A stretch of DNA of 62,653 bases, the filler included, from Choristocarpus tenellus KU-1152 (taxonomy: Eukaryota > Protista > Phaeophyceae), in the NCBI GenBank assembly GCA_964200185.2. It is 11 parts of 11 records of this genome, joined end to end, with 100 filler letters (N's around TTAATTAATTAA, not from the genome) between each part and the next. Parts side by side here need not be neighbours in the genome. Positions count along the whole stretch, not along the records: positions 8,392 to 16,950 come from CAXNAD020004586.1; 10 more parts are not named here. One strand, 5' to 3'. The position numbers and the translations under genes are program-made. The notes under the pieces are model-generated. The model was not told the DNA's origin. It did not search any database and saw only the letters and a list, made by a program, of their open reading frames with translations. Numbering within the stretch: the first letter of the stretch is position 1; the number at the start of each line of letters is the position of its first letter. Of the stretch, positions 4,155 through 18,915 are shown in pieces.

Positions 4155-7100
4155 TCATAACATGTATGCTGTGGTGTGGGGTGTGCCATCCACCCTTGCT
4201 GGATTCTGCTCCTGATGGCTTCTCTTCACCTCCACTGCATATCCTTCAAAACTAACCTGCTACACAAGAAGGGATTGTGTTCTTCTGATGTTCTTCCGCT
4301 GTTCACAGCACCCTTCACTTGGCGGCTGCTGCTCTGGCTTTATGTACCTCACTGAGCTCAACAAGTACATTGGCAAACATTTCCATTGTGTGTGTCTTCA
4401 CCCCTTTGCAGTCAGGGTCACTCGACCCTGCTTGAGGCAAGCTGTTTGTGATCCCCTCAGCTTGACCTCTGCTGAAATCAGTCACACATGCTTGTTCTGG
4501 CAGCATGGTGTGAGACGATATGTTGCTGGCAACTACAACATCAGTGGGAGGTTTGCCCTCTACACATGGACACTTTGTGGCGACCATAGCCTCCTCACTG
4601 TCCTCACACTTTCCCAAGAAATCCTGTGACCTCTCTTGTGGCTTTCCATTGTTACCTCCTGTTGCAAAGGCTATCCCATTGTAAGTAACCTCTTCCATCT
4701 CAGGCGCCATTTCAATACACAACCTGGTGAAGTCTTCAAACCCCATAAGTGTTACAGGCCCCCATGCATCCCGATCCTCTTGCAACTCTATGACTGCAGT
4801 TGTGTTGTTACTATCACCATTCCTATCTCCCTCAAGAATTGCACCACCATATGAAGCTGGAGGAGTAGCAGAACTATTCACAAGAGTCTTACAATCTCCA
4901 GCAGAACACCCTCCAGGAGGATAGCCCTTGTTGTTCTTTACATGGCTTCTGCACCAACGCCAAACCTTCTCAGGTGAGATGGAGCGACCAGCGTCCTGGA
5001 TCAGTGCTACCGCCCCCTCAACCGAAACTCGACCAAAAGCACCTGAACCGAACAGAGCTCGGTGATTAAATGCTCTTCTAGCCTTGTCCTTGTCAGGGAA
5101 GAGGACTTCCAACACCTGGGTTTCATCCTTACCATAAGTATCAGCCCAGTTAAGAGTCCCAGTCTGAGGTCTTTCTTCAGGGGGGACTTCTGGATCTTTG
5201 CCGCCAACTGTCATATTACTATCGTTCCGATGTAACTGCTTCTCTTTCCCCTCTGCCTCTTGTTCTAATAAAGAGGTCGTTGTTGTTGTTGGCATATTTA
5301 CGCTGCAGCTGTTGTCCATGTCTGGCGTAGCCTCAACTTGGAGGGAAGAACCCCGTTCCTGGCATTTGCTGTGGCCTTCTTGAACCAGATCTTTCCTCCA
5401 TCCTTCCCCTCCTCTTACAACTGTGCGCTGCTGCGCCTCATGTTCCTCCTTGGCTGCTGCGGCATAGAGGAGAACAAAGTGACCAAAGCCGAAGAGCTTT
5501 CTAGAGTAGCCTGAGACCTTGTGAAGAAGCTGCATCCAACGCCTCCACACTCCACGATGTGGGCCTGAATATGCATTGCCCCTCATCTTCGAGGATACAA
5601 ACTGAGTGATGCCAATACGATCTAGCTACAATAGGGACAGTAATGGAGAATTTGATTGAGAGGGGCACAATGACAAGTGATAAATAAAATAAAAGGTTCC
5701 AAGAAACTCCTCGGACCCTTTTTTAAAACAGAATCCAATATCCCAGACTAGAAATATTGGACCACCGGCTCTGGGTCAACTAGAGTCCACGTCGAATCCG
5801 GCAGTGGTCTACTTAGGCACCAGCAACTCCACTCATCTTCTCACCGTGTCTACATCATAAGATCCGTTGTCCGAGAAGATATCTCCGTCAGTATATAGCT
5901 TAGCCAGGAGAAGTATGACTTTGGTCCGACTTACTGGTCCTGGAGCGTCTGGGTATTCGTCATAAATATCTCTAAATGCTAGTGTTACATCCATTAGGCA
6001 TGCACGAGCGTTTTGCTCACGCCTGGCTGCAGACTGCCTGGTAGACAGTGTGAGGGGAAAGGAGTGAGGTCCAGATACGTGCTACCAGTACACAATTGCT
6101 TTGCTGGTCATGTTCTAGTAGCCGTCAGTTTGAAGAGTTGCACTGCTCGATAGTAGTTCTTGGTGAACCTTCCTTTGGACAAGGCTCATTGAACCCAAAG
6201 TAGTTCATCCTATAGAGTCTTCCTTTACTAGTTTATCCCTCTACACTAAAAGGAATACCAAAGAGTGCACATATCCAGTGGAAAAATCTGTAGCTGAAAT
6301 GCAGGGGTAGCGCGGAAGACGAAATCATCTTGCAGTACACTCTAGTAGGGTGGGTGATAACATGGTAAATTATATAGTGTATTTGAGACATGTCATGTCA
6401 AGTCTTCGATACACGCTTGGTACTATTCTTACGTATGCTCACATCAACAGATGCTGTTGTCCTCTCTTCGGACGATGTCTATGGCCTCCACGTTTAAAGT
6501 TGCACTCACCCCTGGAGTGTGTATAACAACTGCTCTCTTTGTCCTCATCACTACTATCAGTAGAGCAACCTTTTGCTTCTGATACGTTTGACTCTAGTCG
6601 TCTGTGTCGTCGCTTCTGGAGACCTTTGATATCTTTCTTTCCTTTGACCAAGTCAGACCTCCCTAAATCATCAGGAGATGAAGACGAAGAGAAACCATGG
6701 GTTGTACTCGTAGGCACTGGACAAGCCCATTTTAGGAAAGCGACGTGAAGATCTCCCACTCCTGGAACGAGGAGGCCATCGTCCTCGTATCTAGAAACAG
6801 TAGTCAGGGCTGCTTCAATCTTGGACAGTGATGGAAGCGGATGGCGCGCTAACGTAGGAGATGATAAGGCTGATTCTCTGACCAGAGGGCGATTCACATT
6901 GCTGGTCAAGTTGATCCTTCTGACTTTTAGTGGGGCGGGCCTCATACCATCCAATCGTACGGCAATTATCTCCCCTCTATGTGCATAGGCCTTTGCTTGA
7001 CTGAACGTTCGCCTGATGTGGGAGGCAGTGGCATGATCACAACACATGAACATCCGAGTGCCTGATCCTGCTGCCTTCAACCGTATGTGTGGATCGCCAG

Positions 7101-8391: not shown

Positions 8392-10330
8392 ACGCCCACC
8401 CCATCCTCCCCTACCACGTCCCCTGCCACCCATATTCCGCTCTTTAGTTGCAAGGGGGTGCGGGGTTACAGAAGAGAGATCAAGAGCGTCAGGTAAACAA
8501 GATGAGTTTTTTCATCGATGGAGATAACAGGTGTGGTGATAGGTAAAGAGACGGGCGTCAACTTTGACGTGGGGGGCGGGGGGAAGGGTGTCTTTAAAAA
8601 CACAACAAAAGCTTGACACAAGAACTAAGGGGGAGTAACGTTCTTCCTGATCTAAAACCAAGCCAGAGGAGCCTATCACAACATACTGTATCACACCATT
8701 TTCACCTAGTTTTCTTTATATTGCACAAATATTGTACTATTTACTTGATTGACTAGGTAGAGCACGGAAGTGAAGAACTTTTTGCCAATAATACGATATT
8801 TTCGTGCCTGGCATGTACTAAAATCTCAAGCAGCCGCAGCAGAACATGTATCTGAATTTTTTTTTCTTGTGAACAAATGAAAAACATCGTAGTCACACTG
8901 AACGAGCCACTGTTCGCCAAAACCACTAAACAGATGCTTGTAACAATGATAGCAAGCGCAAATATAATCTCTTCCTAGGTTATCAATATTTTGCCTGTAG
9001 TCTCGAAGGTTTGCCAGAACCCCTTCACAAGCACATTTGTATCCATGCTCCTCCTTCCTTGCCCTTCCTTACCCAAGCACTGGCTGATACCACGCAATAA
9101 AACTTGAGTCCTTCGCCATACCCTACTTGTTCAACATACCTTCCCCACCTTGTCCCCTTTAGTGACCATTAAAACGACATCTGATTCACTTCCTAACTCA
9201 AAAAATCCTTGCAAAGAGGCGAGACTCACTTTCTTTGGATAGATCTTCCTCCTGGACCATGTCCAACACCTCATCAGGGATAGTAAGGTATTTTATGCTG
9301 TTCCCACGGGCGTACACCTCTGCCAGCTTGACAAACTTATCACCGTCCTTCAATTCGCAGAGAACCCAACAAATCGAGAAGGGGGTAAGGGGTGACACTT
9401 AGAGGATGGGGGGGGAGATGACGATACAATTGGGTTCTAACGTTGCAAAGAGTAGTACCCATTCGGGTCATACAATGTGGATACTTGAGCAATTCAACCA
9501 TCAACAATAATGCGAAAAAATCTCTTCAAAAAATTTAGCACCTCGAAGAATTTTCAAATGTTGACTGAATCACTGTAATGAGATAAGAGGTCCGGACAGA
9601 TTGATGATGCCAGCGGTATCAATGACAATTTGAAAGAGCGTATTGCACCATGAGGTGGAAAAGCAGAGGGAGATGTCGCCACTAAAGGCTTAGTTGGCTT
9701 GCTTGCTCGCCGATATTGTTTCAGGGCTGACCATGGGTTCCGCTTTAAAAAGTCAAATCACTCGGTTCCTCCTAAGAACTGCCCGGCACTAAACAATACC
9801 CCATTATGTACCATTTTTCAGTCCAGAGATTACCATCTCACTCAGCCTTGCAACCTTGAATGCACCAAGTGCTAGATACCTGCCCAACATCTGCCCGAAC
9901 GAGAATTTCGATTGAAATTTTACCACTTCACTCGGATAATCTTCACTCGTTGTACCACTTTGTCACAAGAAGCACACATCCCCAAAATTTGAAAGACACC
10001 AGTTGAGTGCCCCATATTTTAAAAGTGGAAGTACCCTAGATGTCCAGATAACATCGCGTAGCTTGATATTCATCCAGCTGTCACAGCTTTCCAATCTTCC
10101 ATTATATGTGTCACCATTCTTCAGCTCAACCAGCATAGGCTGGCCTAGTGCAGTCTTGAGCAAAGATAGTGGAAGCTGAACAAGAGGAAAGGGATTGGAT
10201 GAGATAGAGGTATTTATGCAAGCTTTCAAAAACGAGAAAAATATACTGAATATCCAACCGAGGGGTTAGATGGCAAAATTGCAAGCCTCCCTACCAGACA
10301 ATTCTACAGTCTGTTCGACTCGCTCACCAT
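8392..10330 (-). CDS. LSM4: U6 snRNA-associated Sm-like protein LSm4 (3'-truncated); exons 10330-10328 (ATG only), 10175-10035, 9347-9230, 8441-8392
   Basis: The spliced product [104 protein letters not shown] matches the LSm4 Sm fold plus its RG tail. All introns are GT-AG and phase-consistent. Confidence 0.96.
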
Positions 10331-10485
10331 GCTTTCCTCACTATGTCCTGGCAAGAAAGGTATTGCGTTGTTGTTAGTTGTGATCAACCCTTTCCCTTCC
10401 GCGCGCAAGTGACGACCGCGTGACGATTGTTGTCCCCACTTCCAATTGAACTACACAATGGACTAGTTGTAGCACCTTCAATAAG
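10331..10485. promoter_or_regulatory. Probable shared bidirectional promoter/5'UTR region between LSM4 and the HNH-AP2 gene
   Basis: Only 155 nt separate the two divergent ATGs. Confidence 0.5.
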
Positions 10486-13400
10486 ATGAGAGCCAACAAT
10501 GTCTCGGTTATGGCACTACTCGTGTGCTCGTTGCAGGTTTGTCTGGCATACCGATTTCCTTTTGGAGCTCCAGTATCGAAAAGGTCGCGAAGTTCCATAG
10601 AATGGTCGCGTGCTCCATCCAAAGGTCACGATGTTCACAGCCAAAACCTCCTTCCTCAAATATGTGTAGAACGACTATCGCGTAGGGAAGTTTCGGCATA
10701 TTGCTGGCGAGGATGGAAATCGTACTTTGTTGAGGCTATTCATTATGGTCATGCTATACGGTCTACCAAAATGTGGGCCTCGTCTAGTATTAGCGAATTG
10801 GGCAGCTCCCTTGTAACATCTCCTCAGGACAGAATGGACGACCAGGTCTCAGCGTTGAACAAGATCGAGCCAGAACCTGAGGAAGGTGTTGTTTGTGACC
10901 CCAATACACCCGTAGGATCCAATTCCGTTGATGATGGTTTGGGTGTTCATCTTATTGGGACCTCAACTGACCCTGAGATAGACCAAACCTGTAACGAGGA
11001 CAACGAGATGGACGTGCCCACATGGGTGATACCCACAGACGGCGCGCCCATTCGACACCGGGCGGACAAGGAAGGAAACGTGTGGTGGATAAAAGTGTTG
11101 AAGAGTGGTGAAGTTTCGAGAAAAAAGCTTATGCCATGCAAGAAGTTGAGCGCCAATGGCGAAACATGGTACAAAATTTTGTGTGGAGACAAGAAAGTGC
11201 AGGTGGTCGGCGCCCAGATCATCTTAGGCTCTTTCATTGGTGTATACCCAGGAGACGACAAGGTGATAGTTCGACACTTGCTAGATGGCTTGCATTCTTA
11301 GGATCATCAGAAGAATCAGTTCCTGTGCCCTGTTCACCAACTCAACCCTGATTACATTCGCCTTGGCAGGACCTTTGGCGCATCGAGTACATTAACGGGG
11401 ATAAGAAAGACAATCGACTTTGCAATCTCCGTTATGTCACTGTTGAGGACATGACGAACCAGACTTGGAAGGAACACCCTGAACTCCCGGAAATTGAGGT
11501 TTGCGCCTGTTTTCAAAATGGCTTCAATCAGAAGTGGTCACCAGCTGCTAGTGCTGCAATAGTCTTTCTTGGAGTGTAACGCAGTGCTGTGTAGAAGACT
11601 ATTGTTGTTGATTTCTCCAAACGTCTTGGCCCTCTAACTGCTGTAACTAGATAAAGTGGACGACCTTGCACTAGTTTGCCGGCTTACTGCAGTTCTCACC
11701 GGTGTAGACTTTTTCCCTTCCATCCAGGTGTCGAGAGAGGGTGCCGTACGCTTCTCTAATCCTTTGAGGCAAGACAGACCTGAGCTCTGGGATTGGGGTG
11801 TAGTTGGTCAGAATTGCAAATTCATTACATGGAGGGAAGAATCCACCGGGTTGAGGAGAAGATTGGCCGTACACCATCTTGTGTACAGGACTTGGGGTTC
11901 TGGTGCAGAGCACAAACAGAGCCAAAATACTTTTGTTCGTCACATCGACAACAACTGGTTGAACAACCACATAGACAACCTGGACGCCGTGGAGGTATAT
12001 AAGTGATAGCATACATAGTAGTTGTTGTCGATTACTGTGTGAACTTGCTGATAAGGCATACTTCGAGTTTGCTTCTTTTTTGGAGTGCATCTGCATTGGA
12101 GTTTGTGGACTTCTTTCACCATTGTGATGTGTGTTTCTTTTTACCAACATTTTCTTCCCCATTGGCCGCGTTTGTTTATCTCCTCACTTCTCAATTGTTC
12201 AACAGGTGCAAGAGGCTTGGGACCTCAGTGAAGAGGAGATTTTAAGCTTGGAGACTATGTCCGGAGCACCAGGGGTGTGTTGGAGTAAGGAACTCAAGAA
12301 GTGGATGGCATTTGTGCATATTGGTGGGAAACGGGAGTACCTGGACTCATTTACCAACTTTGAGAAAGCTGAGACTACTGCAAAGCTGGCTCAAGGTCTT
12401 GCAGACAATAGGCATGCCGGTATGATATCTGAACTTAGTATTTGCTCCTACCAAGGGCTACCTCTATAACATTGAGATCTCCCATATTTGAATTTGTTTT
12501 CTCGACTGAAGGCTTGAAGTGCTTTTGAATAACTCAGCGGGGTTTTGGCAAAGAGCTTGTAGTCTGCAGTCATCAATGCCTGGCGAAAACACTTCACTAT
12601 TTTTCTAATTCGTTCGGGTTATCCTAGATATGCCAGCCTGGTGGATTCATATCCGTGGAACACCCTGAGTCAAGTGTTGTGCCTAATGACAGGCAACTGA
12701 CCCATCATATGATCTAACTACTTGTATGGATCACATTACACCATCTTCTGCATGTTTATACCACCTGCTCATTCTATCCCCAGCTATGGTGTTCATGATT
12801 GCATCGGCACCATACTAGAAAGCATACCGCTGTTTTCTGTGACATTGTTGGCATTGATACATGGGCAAATGTGATTGGCAGAGGGATGGTGAGAAGCACT
12901 TGGTTGGAAAAGGAATCAAGGATAGAAGGAAACACCCTTTTTCTCAAATTATCTGTACCATACAATGTTACTGTAACACTTTCGTGATGAAATATTTGTA
13001 ATGTTTGCTGCGGAAATGGCCTCGACCCTTCCACACTCAAGAAACGTACTTTATTTCCAGACTTTCTTCAACTCACCTTCTTCCCTGTTTGGCTGACCGT
13101 TGTGTGAACATTGTCACAACTTCCTCCTTATTGTTATTAGTCGTTGAAGAAAGGAGCCATGAACTAGGGTCGAAGCCTGACTCCCCCCAAGATCAAGAGC
13201 CTAAGGTGGGTGCTTGAGGTGACATTTGTTGGAGTTGTAGTAATATTTTCAATATTGCTTGGATAGATAAGGTCCGTAAGGACAAATGAGAATTAGGTGC
13301 CACGCGTCTACCTGAAGTATGTACAGGATCGTAGGTTGTTCATCCAACCAATAAGCCAGCTCTCAGTATGTTGTCCTCGACCTATGTGGCAAAGTACAAC

Positions 13401-13883
13401 CTTGTGCACTCTGCAATTCCTTGAGCACAATGTACTCCAGAGTATGTATGTATAGACAAATTTGTTGTATCCCATGGAACACAACAGCACCAGTATCTCT
13501 ATTTAAAGGTGCAGGCTGCGTGGGGTGCACAATCAGCTAGAACAGTTGTAATTGCTTTGGCTGTTACAATCCAGTGGTTGTTGTGTTCTACCGGAACTAT
13601 TGAAATTGATTCCTCATTTTATATACCAATAAAATATGGCGCCTCGCTTGGACTAACCCTTAGTGTTCTTCTGTTTCCTTGTTGCTCGGTCACTTAGAAT
13701 TCCAAGTCCAGCAGTGGCTTGGCATCTGGAGTGAAAGGGGTGTATTGGCATAAGTCTGACAAGAAGTGGGTAGCTCGATTGACCTTGAACAGGAAGCGGA
13801 CAGTGGTGGGCAGCTTTGACGTGCTTGAAGACGCTACAGAGGCTATGACATTAGCGAAAAGAGTCTCTGAGTTTGAGGGCTAG
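10486..13883 (+). CDS. Homing-endonuclease-derived (NUMOD4-HNH)x2-(AP2)x2 protein, 545 aa, with predicted bipartite plastid presequence; exons 10486-11262, 11370-11498, 11728-11994, 12206-12419, 13141-13205, 13698-13883
   Basis: Five GT-AG introns with consistent phases (0,0,0,1,0) give a 1638-nt frame ending in TAG. HNH_3-like motifs: IEYINGDKKDNRLCNLRYVT and VHHLVYRTW...VRHIDNNWLNNHIDNLDAV. NUMOD4-like: WKEHPELPEIEVSREGAVR. AP2 motifs: SGAPGVCWSKELKKWMAFVHIGGKREYLDSF and SGVKGVYWHKSDKKWVARLTLNRKRTVVGSF. Confidence 0.88.
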
Positions 13884-14899
13884 GGGACATGCTAAGCAAA
13901 TCATTTTTTGTATTTGTATAGACCAATAGAAGTATCTTTCGGCAGATTTGGCCTCTGAGCTCCAATAGGGGTTGCTGCATCCAACCCAATTATTTCTTTT
14001 TCTCAAGTTAGGGAGGGAAATAATGGAGATCTCAGTTATTGTGTTGGCTTATGACCTGATGAGAGTCTTGTCTTGTCTTGTCGAAGCGTTATTAATTTAT
14101 ACTTCATCATTTGAAGTACTGGACTAGTATATTGTTTATAGTGACTCAATTGTGTCGCAGCTAAAAAAAATTGTCTCTTATATTGTGCTGGTACAAAAGT
14201 ATTGTCACCACAGGAAGGCAATCCAGGAGAGGATGAACAGTTGGAAAACAATGTTGTGGAAATGGATGTTGGTCAAGAAGAGAGTAATGTAGTCGTCATG
14301 ATCGTCAGCACTTCCCATGATGACACTCAAAGGGTTTTTTACCCTTTTCACGTACCACATAGATACACTTGTGGTCATTCGTACATCCCCATATTGATAG
14401 TTCCAGAGAGACATAGTGTCTCACCTCTTCGCTAATTTACAATACCAGTGTGCATATTCTTTAACCAACAAATGATTCCAGCAACAAGGTTCATTGACAA
14501 AGGATAGGAGGAGAGAGTGACAGGGATAGTAGGTGTTGTATGTGGGTGGTTCACAGGTGGAAGTTACACGGCGTTGCACTTCAAGTTAACAGCCAAAGAT
14601 CAGGAAACCCCACCTATAATAGCACTGAGGGGAGGGGGGAATCGTGTCACCCTTCCCTACCTTGTTGAAAAGTGTGTATCTCCTTTCGTTTATTGAAAAT
14701 AGGATGTCTCCCTTCTGTGTCTATGACCCCATGATTCAAGCGTCTGTCTGTCTCTTTGGAATGCCAGGACCACCTCTTTGTGGGCTGTGTAGATGCTCTA
14801 CAACATTCTGTTTCCCTACGCCACGTCTAAAGTCTATCTACCCTTCTCCTCCTCCCCTCCCCTTCCTCCCTGATACGGTCACAATCCTCTGGTTGGTGC

Positions 14900-16200
14900 G
14901 TTTCTTCTGTATGAAGGGGAACCTTGGTTTTTCATGCACTGGAACCTGTACTGAATACTTTGTAAAAAAGATGCTTAGGAGTACTAAGAGAGGTAGATGA
15001 AGTCTTTCCCTGACCCCATTCCAATCTGTGAATTCACCATCATCCATGTGGATGCATGTCTGCATTCCATCATAGAGTTGGCTAATGAGTGAGATCATCT
15101 TGCCAGGGACTCTAATCTCGGTAAGCTCAGCGCACACGAGATTGCGATCAAGTAGACATATGCTTTCTGTGGGTCAGTGAAACACATGAATGGAGGTACA
15201 TGCTCTTTCCTGTCAAATTCCTGGTGGGCACTTAGGGCATACATCATGCCCACAGTGAATGGTTGGGTCCGGAAAGCAAAATTTTCCTCATGGTCTATGG
15301 TTTCCATTCCAGGAAATCTCCCAGTCGTCAAGTAACATACTTGCGAAACACTTTGCCAGTTTGTGTCACCAACGAGATGCCCCTGTAGAGACCACGACTT
15401 GTCCAATCGTTCTTCTTGTGGAGAAACTCTATAACTGCATCCTTCCAAAGATGTGAGCATCTTCCTGATCCCACACAGCCAACAAAATTTTGTGGAAACT
15501 CTAGAGGGTTGTCTCGTCCTCATTGAGGCCAATTTTCAGAATTTCAGGTCTGGCCCCATCATCTTCATGTTTGCCATTGCGGGGATTGCCTCAACCACAT
15601 CCACCAGTGTTGGTGCTTCAGTGAATACCATGCAATTGTATCGTTCGTTGAGGGACTCAGCGCTATTGAGGTTGACGTTGAACGTCTTGTCATTAGAAGT
15701 GCTTCGAATGGTTGCCCCCTCCGCTCCATGATGTGTCCTAGATCTCTCAATAGCCTGCCCGATTTGTTGTGGGCGTGTTGGGAGGCACCCTTTCTGGTCC
15801 TCTCTACAATGAACCCTTTCAGGTGTTTGTAGAAACTAGCTTGGTTCCACTTGATATAGAAGCTTTTCAGTTGAATTTTTTTCTCTCTTTGGACAATGTT
15901 GATTTGTTTCTTTCATGTAGTAGGGAGCAAACCAATATACTGCGATGATATTGACGTTTTGGTTGTTACCTGCACTTTAGTCTCGGAACTATCCTCACTT
16001 GTGGTCAGAGGCACAACACACTACCACTAATGTAACTAACTGTTGCACTGGGAAATTCCTATAAATAATTGCCTCCGTTTTGCCTTGCCTCTCGCACATT
16101 GGATTCAGCCATCCTACCAGTTGTTGCTCCACCTCTTTTCTCAAATCTTGTGCTGGACTCACCTCGGGGCTGATAGGCAATGAAGCCTTGGTTTCCACCT
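14900..16200 (-). mobile_element. Decayed non-LTR retrotransposon (RTE-like LINE) ORF2 remnant: end of APE endonuclease plus RT
   Basis: Fragmented frames show the APE-terminal SDH motif (VVVCCASDHK), RT motif PPFMCFTDPQKAY (cf. CFIDLxKAYD) and VPGKMISLISQLYDGMQTCIHMDDGEFTDW...LLSIFF. Many stops and frameshifts; boundaries approximate. Confidence 0.8.
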
Positions 16201-16868
16201 TGTTCTTGGTCTGGCATTTTGCGGTATAGCGGCAGGAAGGGTAGTACAGGTGTAAAATCCGTAGCGCTCGCCACGTGGACTCTCGATAATCGAAGGCAGA
16301 TCTTCATGGAGAGAAATCTGATGTTGATGGGGTTTGAACCCACGAAAGTCGTGTAGGAAACAGTCTCCATTTAAACCATCAAGAAACGAACACAAGTACA
16401 AGACGGGCACAGATCTAGAACGTAATCAGGACGAAGGTACCCCATCTCCTACCAATTACCCAAGTGTGTATGTGACATTCTCCCCTCAGGTACACTGAAA
16501 CACGAGGCAAATTGGTACAGAGACAGAGCGAAAGGGGGAAGCTACGATAATACACTGGTATATAGGTTGAATAGGAGGAGCACACTATGACAATATAGTT
16601 GAACATATCCACCACTTCGCATTTAGCTATAGCTATTAACATCTTGAATCGTGCAGAGAACCCTTTTTGGAGTTAGGATAGAGGGCCGTTTCCATTTGCT
16701 AGGCATGCTTTCTTGTTGCGCGAATATGGAAATCCCCACCAAAAAATTGTATGTTGATTTCCTTTGGACACCTTTTGAACATAAGGGTCGGCACTCCTAA
16801 GACCATTGTGATAAAAAAATATTAGTTGTTATCACTAGATGCTAAGCGGTAGATAATTCCAACTATCA

Positions 16869-16911
<43 letters not shown>

Positions 16912-18915
16912 CCCCCCCCCCCCTTTCTTTCTTTTTTTTCGGGTTTTTGGNNNNNNNNNNNNNNNNNNNNNNNNNNNNNNNNNNNNNNNNNNNNTTAATT
17001 AATTAANNNNNNNNNNNNNNNNNNNNNNNNNNNNNNNNNNNNNNNNNNNNCCAAGATACTTTGACCCTGAGTTGGTAACAACGTAGTATGTATTATCCCA
17101 GAAAGGAGAGTATGTATACCTTTGAGGAAAACACACTGAATTGTGCTTGAGTTTTGCTGAACACTATATAGAACTCTGTTAGGCAACAGAGAAGAATCCG
17201 AACACTCTCCACCTCATATTCTGGGCAGGCAATCACAATACTAGCAGGGGAATGGAGAGAGGAGAGCAAGGAAGCTACGATAACCCCAGCCAGGTTACGA
17301 AGAAACCACATTATCCCCTCAATAAGGTAGGTACTGTGCTGGTTTCTGTCGAGCACGTCTGATCAAGTACATTACCATGTTGTTGTGATAGTATTTTGAT
17401 ACACATGCATGATAACTCCTAGTTTAAGCGGGACAAATGACCTCTCTTGACAAAAGATACGAAGGTATGGGCCTTCAGACGAAGATAACTCTTAGAAAAG
17501 CTATTTGGTCTGATCATCCCCAGCACATTATTTCATCCACACATTAAAAATTGTGGTGAAAGAGTCCCACCAAGGCGGCATGGACTTACGAAAACTAATA
17601 GCAAAACAGTTTGGAATAGGGTGGGCAGCAGTGCGTTGGTGGGGATGCTTGAGTCTGTGAGATCAAAGGTGTGAATACCATACACCTTGACAATGCATCA
17701 ACTGTCACAGCATCCTACTATCCTTCCGACGATCGACTTTTCTCTTGGCGGGCAAGCAGCAATTTCTCCTCTACTTGATGGATCCACAGACTAGATTCCC
17801 TTTATATACCAAGTTCTGGTTTCCAGTTCCTGGACCCTTCAATTAATATGTTTCCAACAATTGTCATACACCTAGCAACTCATCATGTAAACATCTCTTC
17901 TAATATTTCTTGTACTGCTCAAGCATACTTCAAGTGTTACGTTATCACTGGGAGTACCTACTACTTTGGATAAATAACGTGTATTTAACTTCAATCCACA
18001 TGATAATTCGCACTGTTGGAGAAGTCACTAAACTGCCTGTTTTACTCTGAAATATTTTGTGTCAATGCTACTGTGGTTCACTCATCGTACGTGCGCGCGA
18101 GCACACACACACACACACACGCAAACACACAAATCGCATGCACTTCTTTGGTGTAATGAGCAAAGTGTCACAGCGCACGGAACTTTGGCTCGTACCACCT
18201 GCGCTAAGATGTAAAGTACGTGACCAAAGAACTTGCTTGAAAACGTGTTGCCCAACCAACAACTAGCTTGGGGGGTATCCAGTCGAAAACTGTATAACCC
18301 TACGCTTATCAGAACAGTAATATTGCTTCGACAGGATCAACAGTTGCACGTATCTTGATCTGTCGCATCACCTTCCTCCTCTACCCTTCAGGTTTCAGCT
18401 ATATCAACTTGGTCAATTGTGCAAGCAGCCAACAATAGTGACATCGTTTGAGAATGGGCTAAGTAGCCAAGAAGGTATCTCCTGCGCACAAAATCTACAC
18501 GGTGCAAGGCGTACAACCCATACCTACTAGACTTGACTTTGGAGGATTCTTCTTTGCAACGCCCAGACGAGGAAAACGTTGAGAGGAGAGGAGATTTGGA
18601 GTAGACTCTTACGGGGAGGGGAGCTCATCTTTACGACAATCAGCTGGCCCAGCCTCAATTTGCCGATACAGGGGTGTGGTGGACATACTGGCTCAGACAT
18701 TTGTTGCGCCGAATCTGTAGCTACTCCAACCCATCCATGAAGTTGTTGATGGGGAAGACCGTGGAGAAATCTATTCCGAGAAATTGATCTCATCCGTCAG
18801 AAGCTCCATGCCCCTACAATTGCTACCCAGGTCCTCTGTTGAAGTCCATAAATTCGTAGACGAGCCAACTTGTTTAGTGCAGGGCAAGAAATTGCCCCTG
18901 CCATACTAAATCTTT

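What the first reader, a model, noticed from the sequence alone, without database searches (positions are those of the whole stretch)
10486..13883. Domesticated phage-type homing endonuclease: intron-containing nuclear gene encoding (NUMOD4-HNH)x2-(AP2)x2
Seen: six phase-consistent exons give an intact 545-aa protein with two NUMOD4-HNH_3 modules followed by two AP2 domains. The ORF track shows only disconnected pieces and misses exons 2 and 6. Established: NUMOD4-HNH and HNH-AP2 fusions are typical of phage/bacterial free-standing homing endonucleases, and HNH-AP2 proteins are the proposed source of eukaryotic AP2/ERF and ApiAP2 DNA-binding domains. The AP2 copies here look phage-like (SGxxGVxWxKxxKKWxA...G/DSF). 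Inference: five spliceosomal introns, no visible TIR/TSD and a position next to LSM4 indicate a long-domesticated host gene that kept the whole endonuclease scaffold and doubled both modules. I do not know of a described eukaryotic family with this architecture.
Basis: partly seen in the sequence, partly recalled or inferred. Interest (0 to 1): 0.88.

Follow-up and report, generated by a model that had tools for sequence, protein, structure and literature searches.

The report
Tamed viral nuclease gene in seaweed
A brown seaweed carries, as an ordinary intron-containing gene, a doubled virus-type DNA-cutting enzyme that has lost its cutting residues, kept its DNA-gripping parts and probably gained an address tag for the chloroplast, which looks like a halfway stage of the route by which plant AP2 gene regulators are thought to have arisen.

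Summary
The gene is real. Six exons joined by five GT-AG introns give an open 545-codon frame, and NCBI holds the identical 545-aa model (CAM9500909.1) for the brown alga Choristocarpus tenellus (Discosporangiales). Exon-wise searches confirm two I-HmuI-like NUMOD4-HNH modules and two phage-like AP2 domains; NUMOD4 is below Pfam's reach but shown by profile, embedding and fold comparisons. (1) Both nuclease sites are degenerate: copy 1 lacks the catalytic His and last metal ligand, copy 2 lacks both usual metal ligands. (2) The N-terminus looks like an ochrophyte signal-plus-transit peptide (ASAFind rules: plastid, low confidence; SignalP not run). 'Long-domesticated' is not shown: no orthologue or paralogue was found, and the head-to-head partner of LSM4 differs in every alga checked, including the sister genus. 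Best reading: a lineage-restricted, domesticated, nuclease-dead DNA-binding protein from a mobile HNH-AP2 endonuclease, more likely plastid than nuclear. New variant of a known kind.

The parts
10486..11262 (+). Exon 1 (residues 1-259)
10486..10548 (+). Signal-peptide-like stretch (residues 1-21), only hydrophobic segment of the protein, ends Cys-Leu-Ala
   Evidence: KD15 2.37; other exons at most 0.89; SignalP not available
10549..10833 (+). Transit-peptide-like stretch (residues 22-116): starts Tyr-Arg-Phe, basic, Ser/Thr-rich, acid-poor; GC3 only 0.41
10834..11016 (+). Acidic linker (residues 117-177; 16 D/E against 1 R/K), begins at an in-frame Met117 in good start context
11020..11262 (+). 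NUMOD4 / I-HmuI N-terminal DNA-binding part of module 1
11263..11369 (+). Intron 1 (GT-AG, 107 nt, phase 0)
   Evidence: viral profile runs on collinearly across it
11370..11498 (+). Exon 2: HNH_3 motif of module 1 (E265, Y266 in place of catalytic His, N274, M287 in place of metal-binding Asn), then start of NUMOD4 of module 2 (from about 11466)
11499..11727 (+). Intron 2 (GT-AG, 229 nt, phase 0), inside NUMOD4 of module 2
11728..11994 (+). Exon 3: rest of NUMOD4 and HNH_3 motif of module 2 (R373, H374, N382)
11995..12205 (+). Intron 3 (GT-AG, 211 nt, phase 0)
12206..12419 (+). Exon 4: end of HNH 2 (A395 in place of metal-binding Asn) and AP2 domain 1 (about 12260-12391), the more diverged copy
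12420..13140 (+). Intron 4 (GT-AG, 721 nt, phase 1)
13141..13205 (+). Exon 5: 21-residue hydrophilic linker, no homology
13206..13697 (+). Intron 5 (GT-AG, 492 nt, phase 0)
13698..13883 (+). Exon 6: phage-type linker and AP2 domain 2 (about 13725-13856), stop codon
8392..10330 (-). LSM4 host gene, head-to-head neighbour (ATG exon 10330-10328, exon 10175-10035, exon from 9347, RG-rich tail cut by the contig end)
10331..10485 (.). 155-bp divergent intergenic region, probable shared promoter
   Evidence: sequence; short divergent spacers are general in brown algae

Best explanation
A nuclear, single-copy host gene of Choristocarpus tenellus that descends from a mobile NUMOD4-HNH-AP2 homing endonuclease (phage, giant virus or Polinton-like virus; donor unresolved). 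Shown: gene structure, domain order, loss of catalytic residues, lack of synteny and of detectable orthologues. Inferred: it is transcribed from the promoter it shares with LSM4 and spliced; the signal peptide takes it into the ER-derived outer plastid membrane and the aromatic-first transit peptide through the inner ones; the mature protein no longer cuts DNA but binds a long site with up to four DNA-binding units (two NUMOD4/HNH scaffolds, two AP2 three-strand sheets), acting on plastid DNA (or RNA) as a nucleoid, transcription or RNA-processing factor. Domesticated and nuclease-dead: about 0.85; plastid-directed given that: about 0.6.
For: Identical public model from a pipeline that builds exons only from transcript and protein alignments; exon 5 has no homology, so transcript support is the likely source (inference). 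His invariant in 58 of 58 viral motifs is Tyr in copy 1; the last metal ligand (Asn in 55 of 58, Gln/His in 3) is Met and Ala; the structural Asn is kept in both. Fold of module 1 matches I-HmuI alone, Z 7.0 against 2.8 next. ASAFind matrix: cut after Ala21 gives +1 Tyr, transit score 1.4; sliding window prefers +1 Phe24, total 5.34; both give 'plastid, low confidence' if SignalP is positive. A like pattern occurs in 0.15-0.8% of null sequences. 116 stop-free codons before Met117: P about 0.004. Introns sit at non-equivalent places in the two modules, so were gained after the doubling. No element ends; C. tenellus has no detected giant-virus regions.
Against: SignalP, HECTAR and ASAFind themselves were not run; my signal test was set after seeing the sequence. 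ASAFind low-confidence specificity is 0.82. GC3 of codons 1-116 is intron-like (0.41 against 0.48-0.61); Met117 has a strong context and an in-frame GT..AG pair (10537-10827) could remove the cleavage site. No orthologue, so no dN/dS. No reads examined. The fold model was built on a NUMOD4 alignment and leans to that fold; exon 3 folded alone failed (pLDDT 41). No binding target known.
Confidence: 0.5

Rival explanations
1. Domesticated nuclease-dead nuclear transcription factor: translation from Met117 gives an acidic (activation-like) stretch followed by four DNA-binding units, a direct parallel to AP2/ERF and ApiAP2 factors. Dual targeting by two starts is possible.
For: Met117 context and acidic stretch 117-177; intron-like GC3 upstream; basic clusters near residues 212-220; brown algae and kin have 3-21 AP2 proteins classed as transcription factors.
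Against: Leaves the 116 open codons and the signal-plus-transit pattern to chance; the public model starts at Met1.
Confidence: 0.3
2. Diverged member of a wider, undescribed brown-algal HNH-AP2 family whose orthologues lie below my search sensitivity or moved away from LSM4 (compatible with either location).
For: Five AP2 genes in Discosporangium and 21 in Schizocladia have unexamined architectures; five intron gains imply age; word-based searches are weak (only 15 and 22 candidates).
Against: An unindexed HMMER scan of 1.84 billion representatives with exon 1 found only the protein itself; exon 6, the most conserved part, found nothing else among 300-954 aa proteins, though other brown-algal proteomes are in that collection.
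Confidence: 0.25
3. Still an active nickase or homing endonuclease, with one composite or atypical active site (copy 2 keeps the His).
For: H374 and N382 kept; Arg before the His occurs in 4 of 58 viral motifs.
Against: Every viral motif, Arg-His ones included, keeps Asn, Gln or His at the last ligand place; here it is Ala. Copy 1 lacks the His.
Confidence: 0.07
4. Cargo of an intron-bearing transposon or decayed viral insertion, or an expressed but functionless relic.
For: Orphan, no synteny; HNH-AP2 genes occur in Tetrahymena germline elements and a Polinton-like virus; masked, unannotated copies could not be counted.
Against: Open frame over six exons despite roughly 45-65% divergence from the nearest viral domains; no TIR/TSD, no viral or transposase gene on the contig; viral regions in brown algae are mostly monoexonic and silent; the neighbouring LINE relic is full of stops and shifts.
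Confidence: 0.08

Closest known systems
I-HmuI-type NUMOD4-HNH_3 phage homing endonucleases (PDB 1U3E)
   Same: NUMOD4 fold followed by an HNH_3 motif, twice.
   Different: Doubled, catalytic residues lost, AP2 in place of the C-terminal helix-turn-helix, spliceosomal introns, presequence.
Phage HNH-AP2 free-standing endonucleases (phrog_99, phrog_4578, phrog_3593)
   Same: AP2 copies 36-57% identical, with the phage linker before AP2 domain 2.
   Different: These are 160-240 aa single HNH-AP2 proteins with intact sites; none of the fetched viral ORFs has two HNH or two AP2 motifs.
NUMOD4-HNH_3-AP2 gene of a Symbiodinium Polinton-like virus (PMC12220804) and Tetrahymena germline-limited HNH-AP2 genes (cited in PMC7714060)
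   Same: Same three domains in the same order inside eukaryotic nuclei.
   Different: Those sit in mobile elements; this one is an intron-rich single gene without element context. Sequences were not compared.
Plant AP2/ERF, ApiAP2 and brown-algal AP2 transcription-associated proteins
   Same: AP2 domains in a host gene, tandem pair as in the AP2 subfamily; proposed origin from HNH-AP2 endonucleases by intron gain and loss of homing (PMC7714060 citing Magnani 2004).
   Different: They have shed the HNH part (own knowledge); this keeps two dead NUMOD4-HNH modules. Its AP2 copies score under the Pfam cut-off singly and match phage profiles better.
OTP51 (PPR protein with two LAGLIDADG motifs, plastid ycf3 intron splicing; PMC9275481) and Toxoplasma mitoribosomal AP2 proteins (bioRxiv 10.64898/2026.01.22.701003; PDB 9FI8)
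   Same: Functional analogues: nucleus-encoded, organelle-targeted proteins built from a homing-endonuclease or AP2 fold and used as nucleic-acid binders.
   Different: Not homologous architectures; different nuclease family; no target known here.

Membership tests
I-HmuI-type NUMOD4-HNH homing endonuclease | NUMOD4 N-terminal DNA-binding fold | tested here: met
   Pfam NUMOD4 no hit, but Atlas features 0.91-0.94, profile p about 0.002 by shuffling for module 1 and E 5e-13 for exon 3 (80), VIA Z 7.0 to 1U3E with an alignment-biased model
I-HmuI-type NUMOD4-HNH homing endonuclease | HNH_3 motif | tested here: met
   Pfam 1.7e-5 and 0.052, PHROG 1.6e-8 and 5.6e-7 for exons 2 and 3
I-HmuI-type NUMOD4-HNH homing endonuclease | Complete active site (metal ligand, His base, final Asn ligand) | tested here: not met
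   copy 1 E-Y..M, copy 2 R-H..A against 58 viral motifs
I-HmuI-type NUMOD4-HNH homing endonuclease | Mobile context (self-splicing intron, intein, viral genome) | tested here: not met
   no Rfam hit, no viral neighbours, spliceosomal introns
I-HmuI-type NUMOD4-HNH homing endonuclease | DNA nicking activity | not testable with these tools
   needs an assay
AP2/ERF or ApiAP2 transcription factor | AP2 domain(s) | tested here: met
   Pfam AP2 5.4e-7 and 0.021 by exon (9); 36.7 bits over cut-off 33.3 for the public record
AP2/ERF or ApiAP2 transcription factor | Descent from the plant or apicomplexan AP2 lineage | tested here: inconclusive
   tree held only viral rows and is unresolved; ApiAP2 match weak, E 1.2 (60)
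AP2/ERF or ApiAP2 transcription factor | Nuclear location and transcriptional effect | not testable with these tools
   N-terminus points to the plastid instead
Ochrophyte plastid-targeted protein (ASAFAP type) | Signal peptide by SignalP | tested here: inconclusive
   hydrophobic core and small residues at -3, -1 (74); SignalP not available
Ochrophyte plastid-targeted protein (ASAFAP type) | F, W, Y or L at +1 | tested here: met
   Tyr22 or Phe24 (rule in 67)
Ochrophyte plastid-targeted protein (ASAFAP type) | High-confidence call (transit score over 2 at the SignalP site) | tested here: inconclusive
   1.4 after Ala21, 4.62 after Arg23 (74); low-confidence class is the likely outcome
Polinton-like virus, giant-virus insertion or DNA transposon | Terminal repeats, TSD, capsid/polymerase/integrase/transposase neighbours | tested here: not met
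   contig is only 8.6 kb
Polinton-like virus, giant-virus insertion or DNA transposon | Multiple dispersed copies | tested here: inconclusive
   no paralogue among annotated proteins; genome DNA and reads not searchable
Conserved brown-algal gene family | Orthologues and synteny | tested here: not met
   sensitivity limited

The most novel reading that the evidence does not exclude
A virus-derived homing endonuclease was captured in the Choristocarpus lineage alone, doubled, inactivated, given five introns and a newly made plastid presequence, and now serves as a sequence-specific plastid DNA- or RNA-binding factor: an HNH-AP2 counterpart of OTP51 and a living intermediate in which AP2 is domesticated with its HNH scaffold still attached.
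Probability: 0.35. Interest if true: 0.8.

Novelty: new variant of a known kind. Interest (0 to 1): 0.62.

Why it matters
The origin of eukaryotic AP2 regulators from HNH-AP2 endonucleases is an inference from end points: mobile intact enzymes on one side, HNH-less factors on the other. This gene has the features predicted for the middle (introns gained, homing lost, scaffold kept) and makes the step testable in one protein. If the plastid tag works, it adds a new route by which viral genes supply organelle nucleic-acid factors in red-lineage plastids. Its weight is limited by being a single orphan in one alga without genetic tools.

Tried and rejected
P0002 (E 6e-15) is a repeat-rich bacterial surface protein, an artefact of summed repeats: rejected. 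Exon 1 against exon 3 by BLASTP: no similarity, so the two modules are deeply diverged. AP2 tree unresolved; the two copies did not group, a single origin is neither shown nor excluded, and viral rows were picked by exon-6 words. Exon 3 in bacterial genomes and exon 4 in viral contigs: nothing. Exon 3 folded alone: unusable. PDB sequence searches by exon: nothing significant. Sigma-70 scan is irrelevant to a eukaryote. Primary papers of Magnani, Wuitschick and Balaji are not held; cited second-hand. Paper searches for this architecture found none; 'HNH' is absent from the held text and supplements of the genome paper (many files cut). Contamination rejected: same contig carries an LSM4 within 90% of the Discosporangium protein.

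Full report
Scope and limits. I worked on 8392-16950 only. As the operators' note requires, the spliced model was searched exon by exon by reference; I did not type, search or fold a joined sequence of my own, and whole-protein homology search and folding were left out. The public record P0001, which a tool returned and which equals the joined model, was used whole for retrieval and look-ups by id and once for a Pfam scan before I restricted myself; one search used it with the region limited to exon 6.

Gene structure. Six exons give 545 codons without a stop; five GT-AG introns of 107-721 nt each carry early in-frame stops and are poorer in G+C than the exons, apart from intron 1. An unindexed search of 1.84 billion cluster representatives with exon 1 returned a 545-aa protein 100% identical over the exon: CAM9500909.1 of Choristocarpus tenellus, assembly GCA_964200185.2, on a contig identical to this piece. 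All six exon translations lie in it in order. That annotation pipeline takes exons only from transcript and protein alignments (bioRxiv 10.1101/2024.02.19.579948); exon 5 has no homology, so transcript support is likely, which is inference, not a read check. The alga belongs to the Discosporangiales, and its LSM4 clusters with that of Discosporangium, so the contig is host DNA.

Domains. HNH_3 is hit in exons 2 and 3, AP2 in exons 4 and 6, with stronger scores to phage HNH-endonuclease PHROGs. Exon 6 matches 530 phage records, best 54%; exon 4 matches 85. Pfam NUMOD4 is not hit. Residues 179-259 align collinearly to a profile of 38 viral NUMOD4-HNH proteins (3 of 2000 shuffles as high), exon 2 continues the profile across intron 1, and exon 3 scores E 5e-13. 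Language-model neighbours are NUMOD4/HNH_3 clusters. A model of 179-259 built on a viral alignment (pLDDT 74) matches I-HmuI alone (Z 7.0, rmsd 3.5, 68 aligned; next 2.8) and NUMOD4 clusters; this is biased by the alignment. The two modules share no BLAST-level similarity; the two AP2 copies share 18 of 44 residues.

Nuclease sites. In 58 viral motifs the His is invariant and the last metal ligand is Asn 55, Gln 2, His 1. Copy 1 has Glu-Tyr and Met; copy 2 has Arg-His and Ala; both keep the structural Asn (I-HmuI alignment, residue roles from my own knowledge). Neither site is complete. The fold seems kept, the chemistry lost.

N-terminus. Residues 6-20 are the only hydrophobic stretch; it ends Cys-Leu-Ala and is followed by Tyr-Arg-Phe-Pro-Phe and a basic, Ser-rich, acid-poor run to residue 116, after which the sequence turns strongly acidic. 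With the published ASAFind matrix and rules (PMC4329603) either candidate cut gives 'plastid, low confidence', provided SignalP is positive, which I could not run. A simple version of the pattern occurs in 0.15-0.8% of shuffled, non-coding, algal and viral nulls, but I set it after seeing the sequence. Against: GC3 of codons 1-116 is intron-like, which fits either a recently recruited presequence or a UTR; Met117 has a good context; an in-frame GT..AG pair at 10537-10827 exists.

Distribution and age. No orthologue or paralogue: exon 1 in the full scan, residues 150-259 among 142-453 aa proteins, exon 6 among 300-954 aa proteins; the last two are word-limited. At LSM4 the divergent neighbour is a GlcNAc transferase in Ectocarpus and Pylaiella, an LRR gene in Discosporangium, nothing called within 10 kb in Ascophyllum and other genes in Tribonema and Heterosigma; no exon matches six of these loci. 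So the position is lineage-specific, and short divergent spacers are common in brown algae. Age is bounded only by five intron gains at places that differ between the modules. Brown algae have 3-21 AP2 proteins whose architectures I could not inspect.

Origin. All sequence relatives found are viral or bacterial, but only prokaryotic and viral collections could be scanned that way. NUMOD4-HNH_3-AP2 is reported in a Symbiodinium Polinton-like virus (PMC12220804), and iridovirus- and marseillevirus-like proteins are among the fold matches. No giant-virus region was detected in C. tenellus. The AP2 tree is unresolved. Donor: undecided. Whether the doubling took place in the virus or the host is also undecided; no fetched viral ORF was doubled.

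Mechanism. Most likely a domesticated, nuclease-dead, multi-unit DNA-binding protein (about 0.85), imported into the plastid (overall 0.5) or acting in the nucleus from Met117 (0.3); active nickase 0.07; mobile or functionless 0.08. It works like I-HmuI in DNA recognition and like OTP51 in evolutionary logic (PMC9275481), but fails membership of homing endonucleases on active site and mobility, and is not shown to belong to AP2/ERF or ApiAP2.

Novelty. The process is the one proposed for AP2/ERF origin (PMC7714060); the three-domain unit is known from mobile elements; I found no description of an intron-containing host gene with this doubled architecture (the library lacks most subscription papers). 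The protein is deposited as 'unnamed protein product'. Verdict: new variant of a known kind, interest 0.62.

Noticed in passing
window about 14990-15760, minus strand (matches at 15021-15304): Decayed non-LTR retrotransposon reverse-transcriptase relic with stops and frameshifts; similar to an RT stretch inside an intron of the Pylaiella GlcNAc-transferase gene (L021 about 4600-5480), E 4e-15.
   Followed up: partly
window 16871-16923: 53-nt poly-C run at the contig end; probably a sequencing or assembly artefact.
   Followed up: no
window 10328-10330: LSM4 has an ATG-only first coding exon that the public annotation misses (model marked partial, begins at 10178); the same ATG-GTGAG exon is seen in Ectocarpus and Discosporangium.
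   Followed up: partly
L036:106-1100 (metagenome contig Ga0302131_1032837): GC-rich, apparently eukaryotic gene with at least four phage-like AP2 repeats, each seemingly cut by an intron at the same place; another case of phage-type AP2 in an intron-containing gene.
   Followed up: partly
L089:259-954: Viral ORF that looks like NUMOD4-like, HNH_3 and a C-terminal AP2-like domain; only HNH_3 reached Pfam.
   Followed up: partly
L020-L023, downstream of LSM4: The 3' neighbour of LSM4, a roughly 1750-aa gene with WD40 hits in three of four species, is conserved across brown algae while the 5' neighbour changes; the contig here ends before it.
   Followed up: no
genome paper, supplement file 34: The C. 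tenellus plastid genome is the smallest and most AT-rich of the rows seen (120,356 bp, 26.5% GC); no link to this gene is shown.
   Followed up: no
window 10580-10631: Weak 20-nt tandem repeat (2.5 copies, 71%) inside the transit-like region.
   Followed up: no
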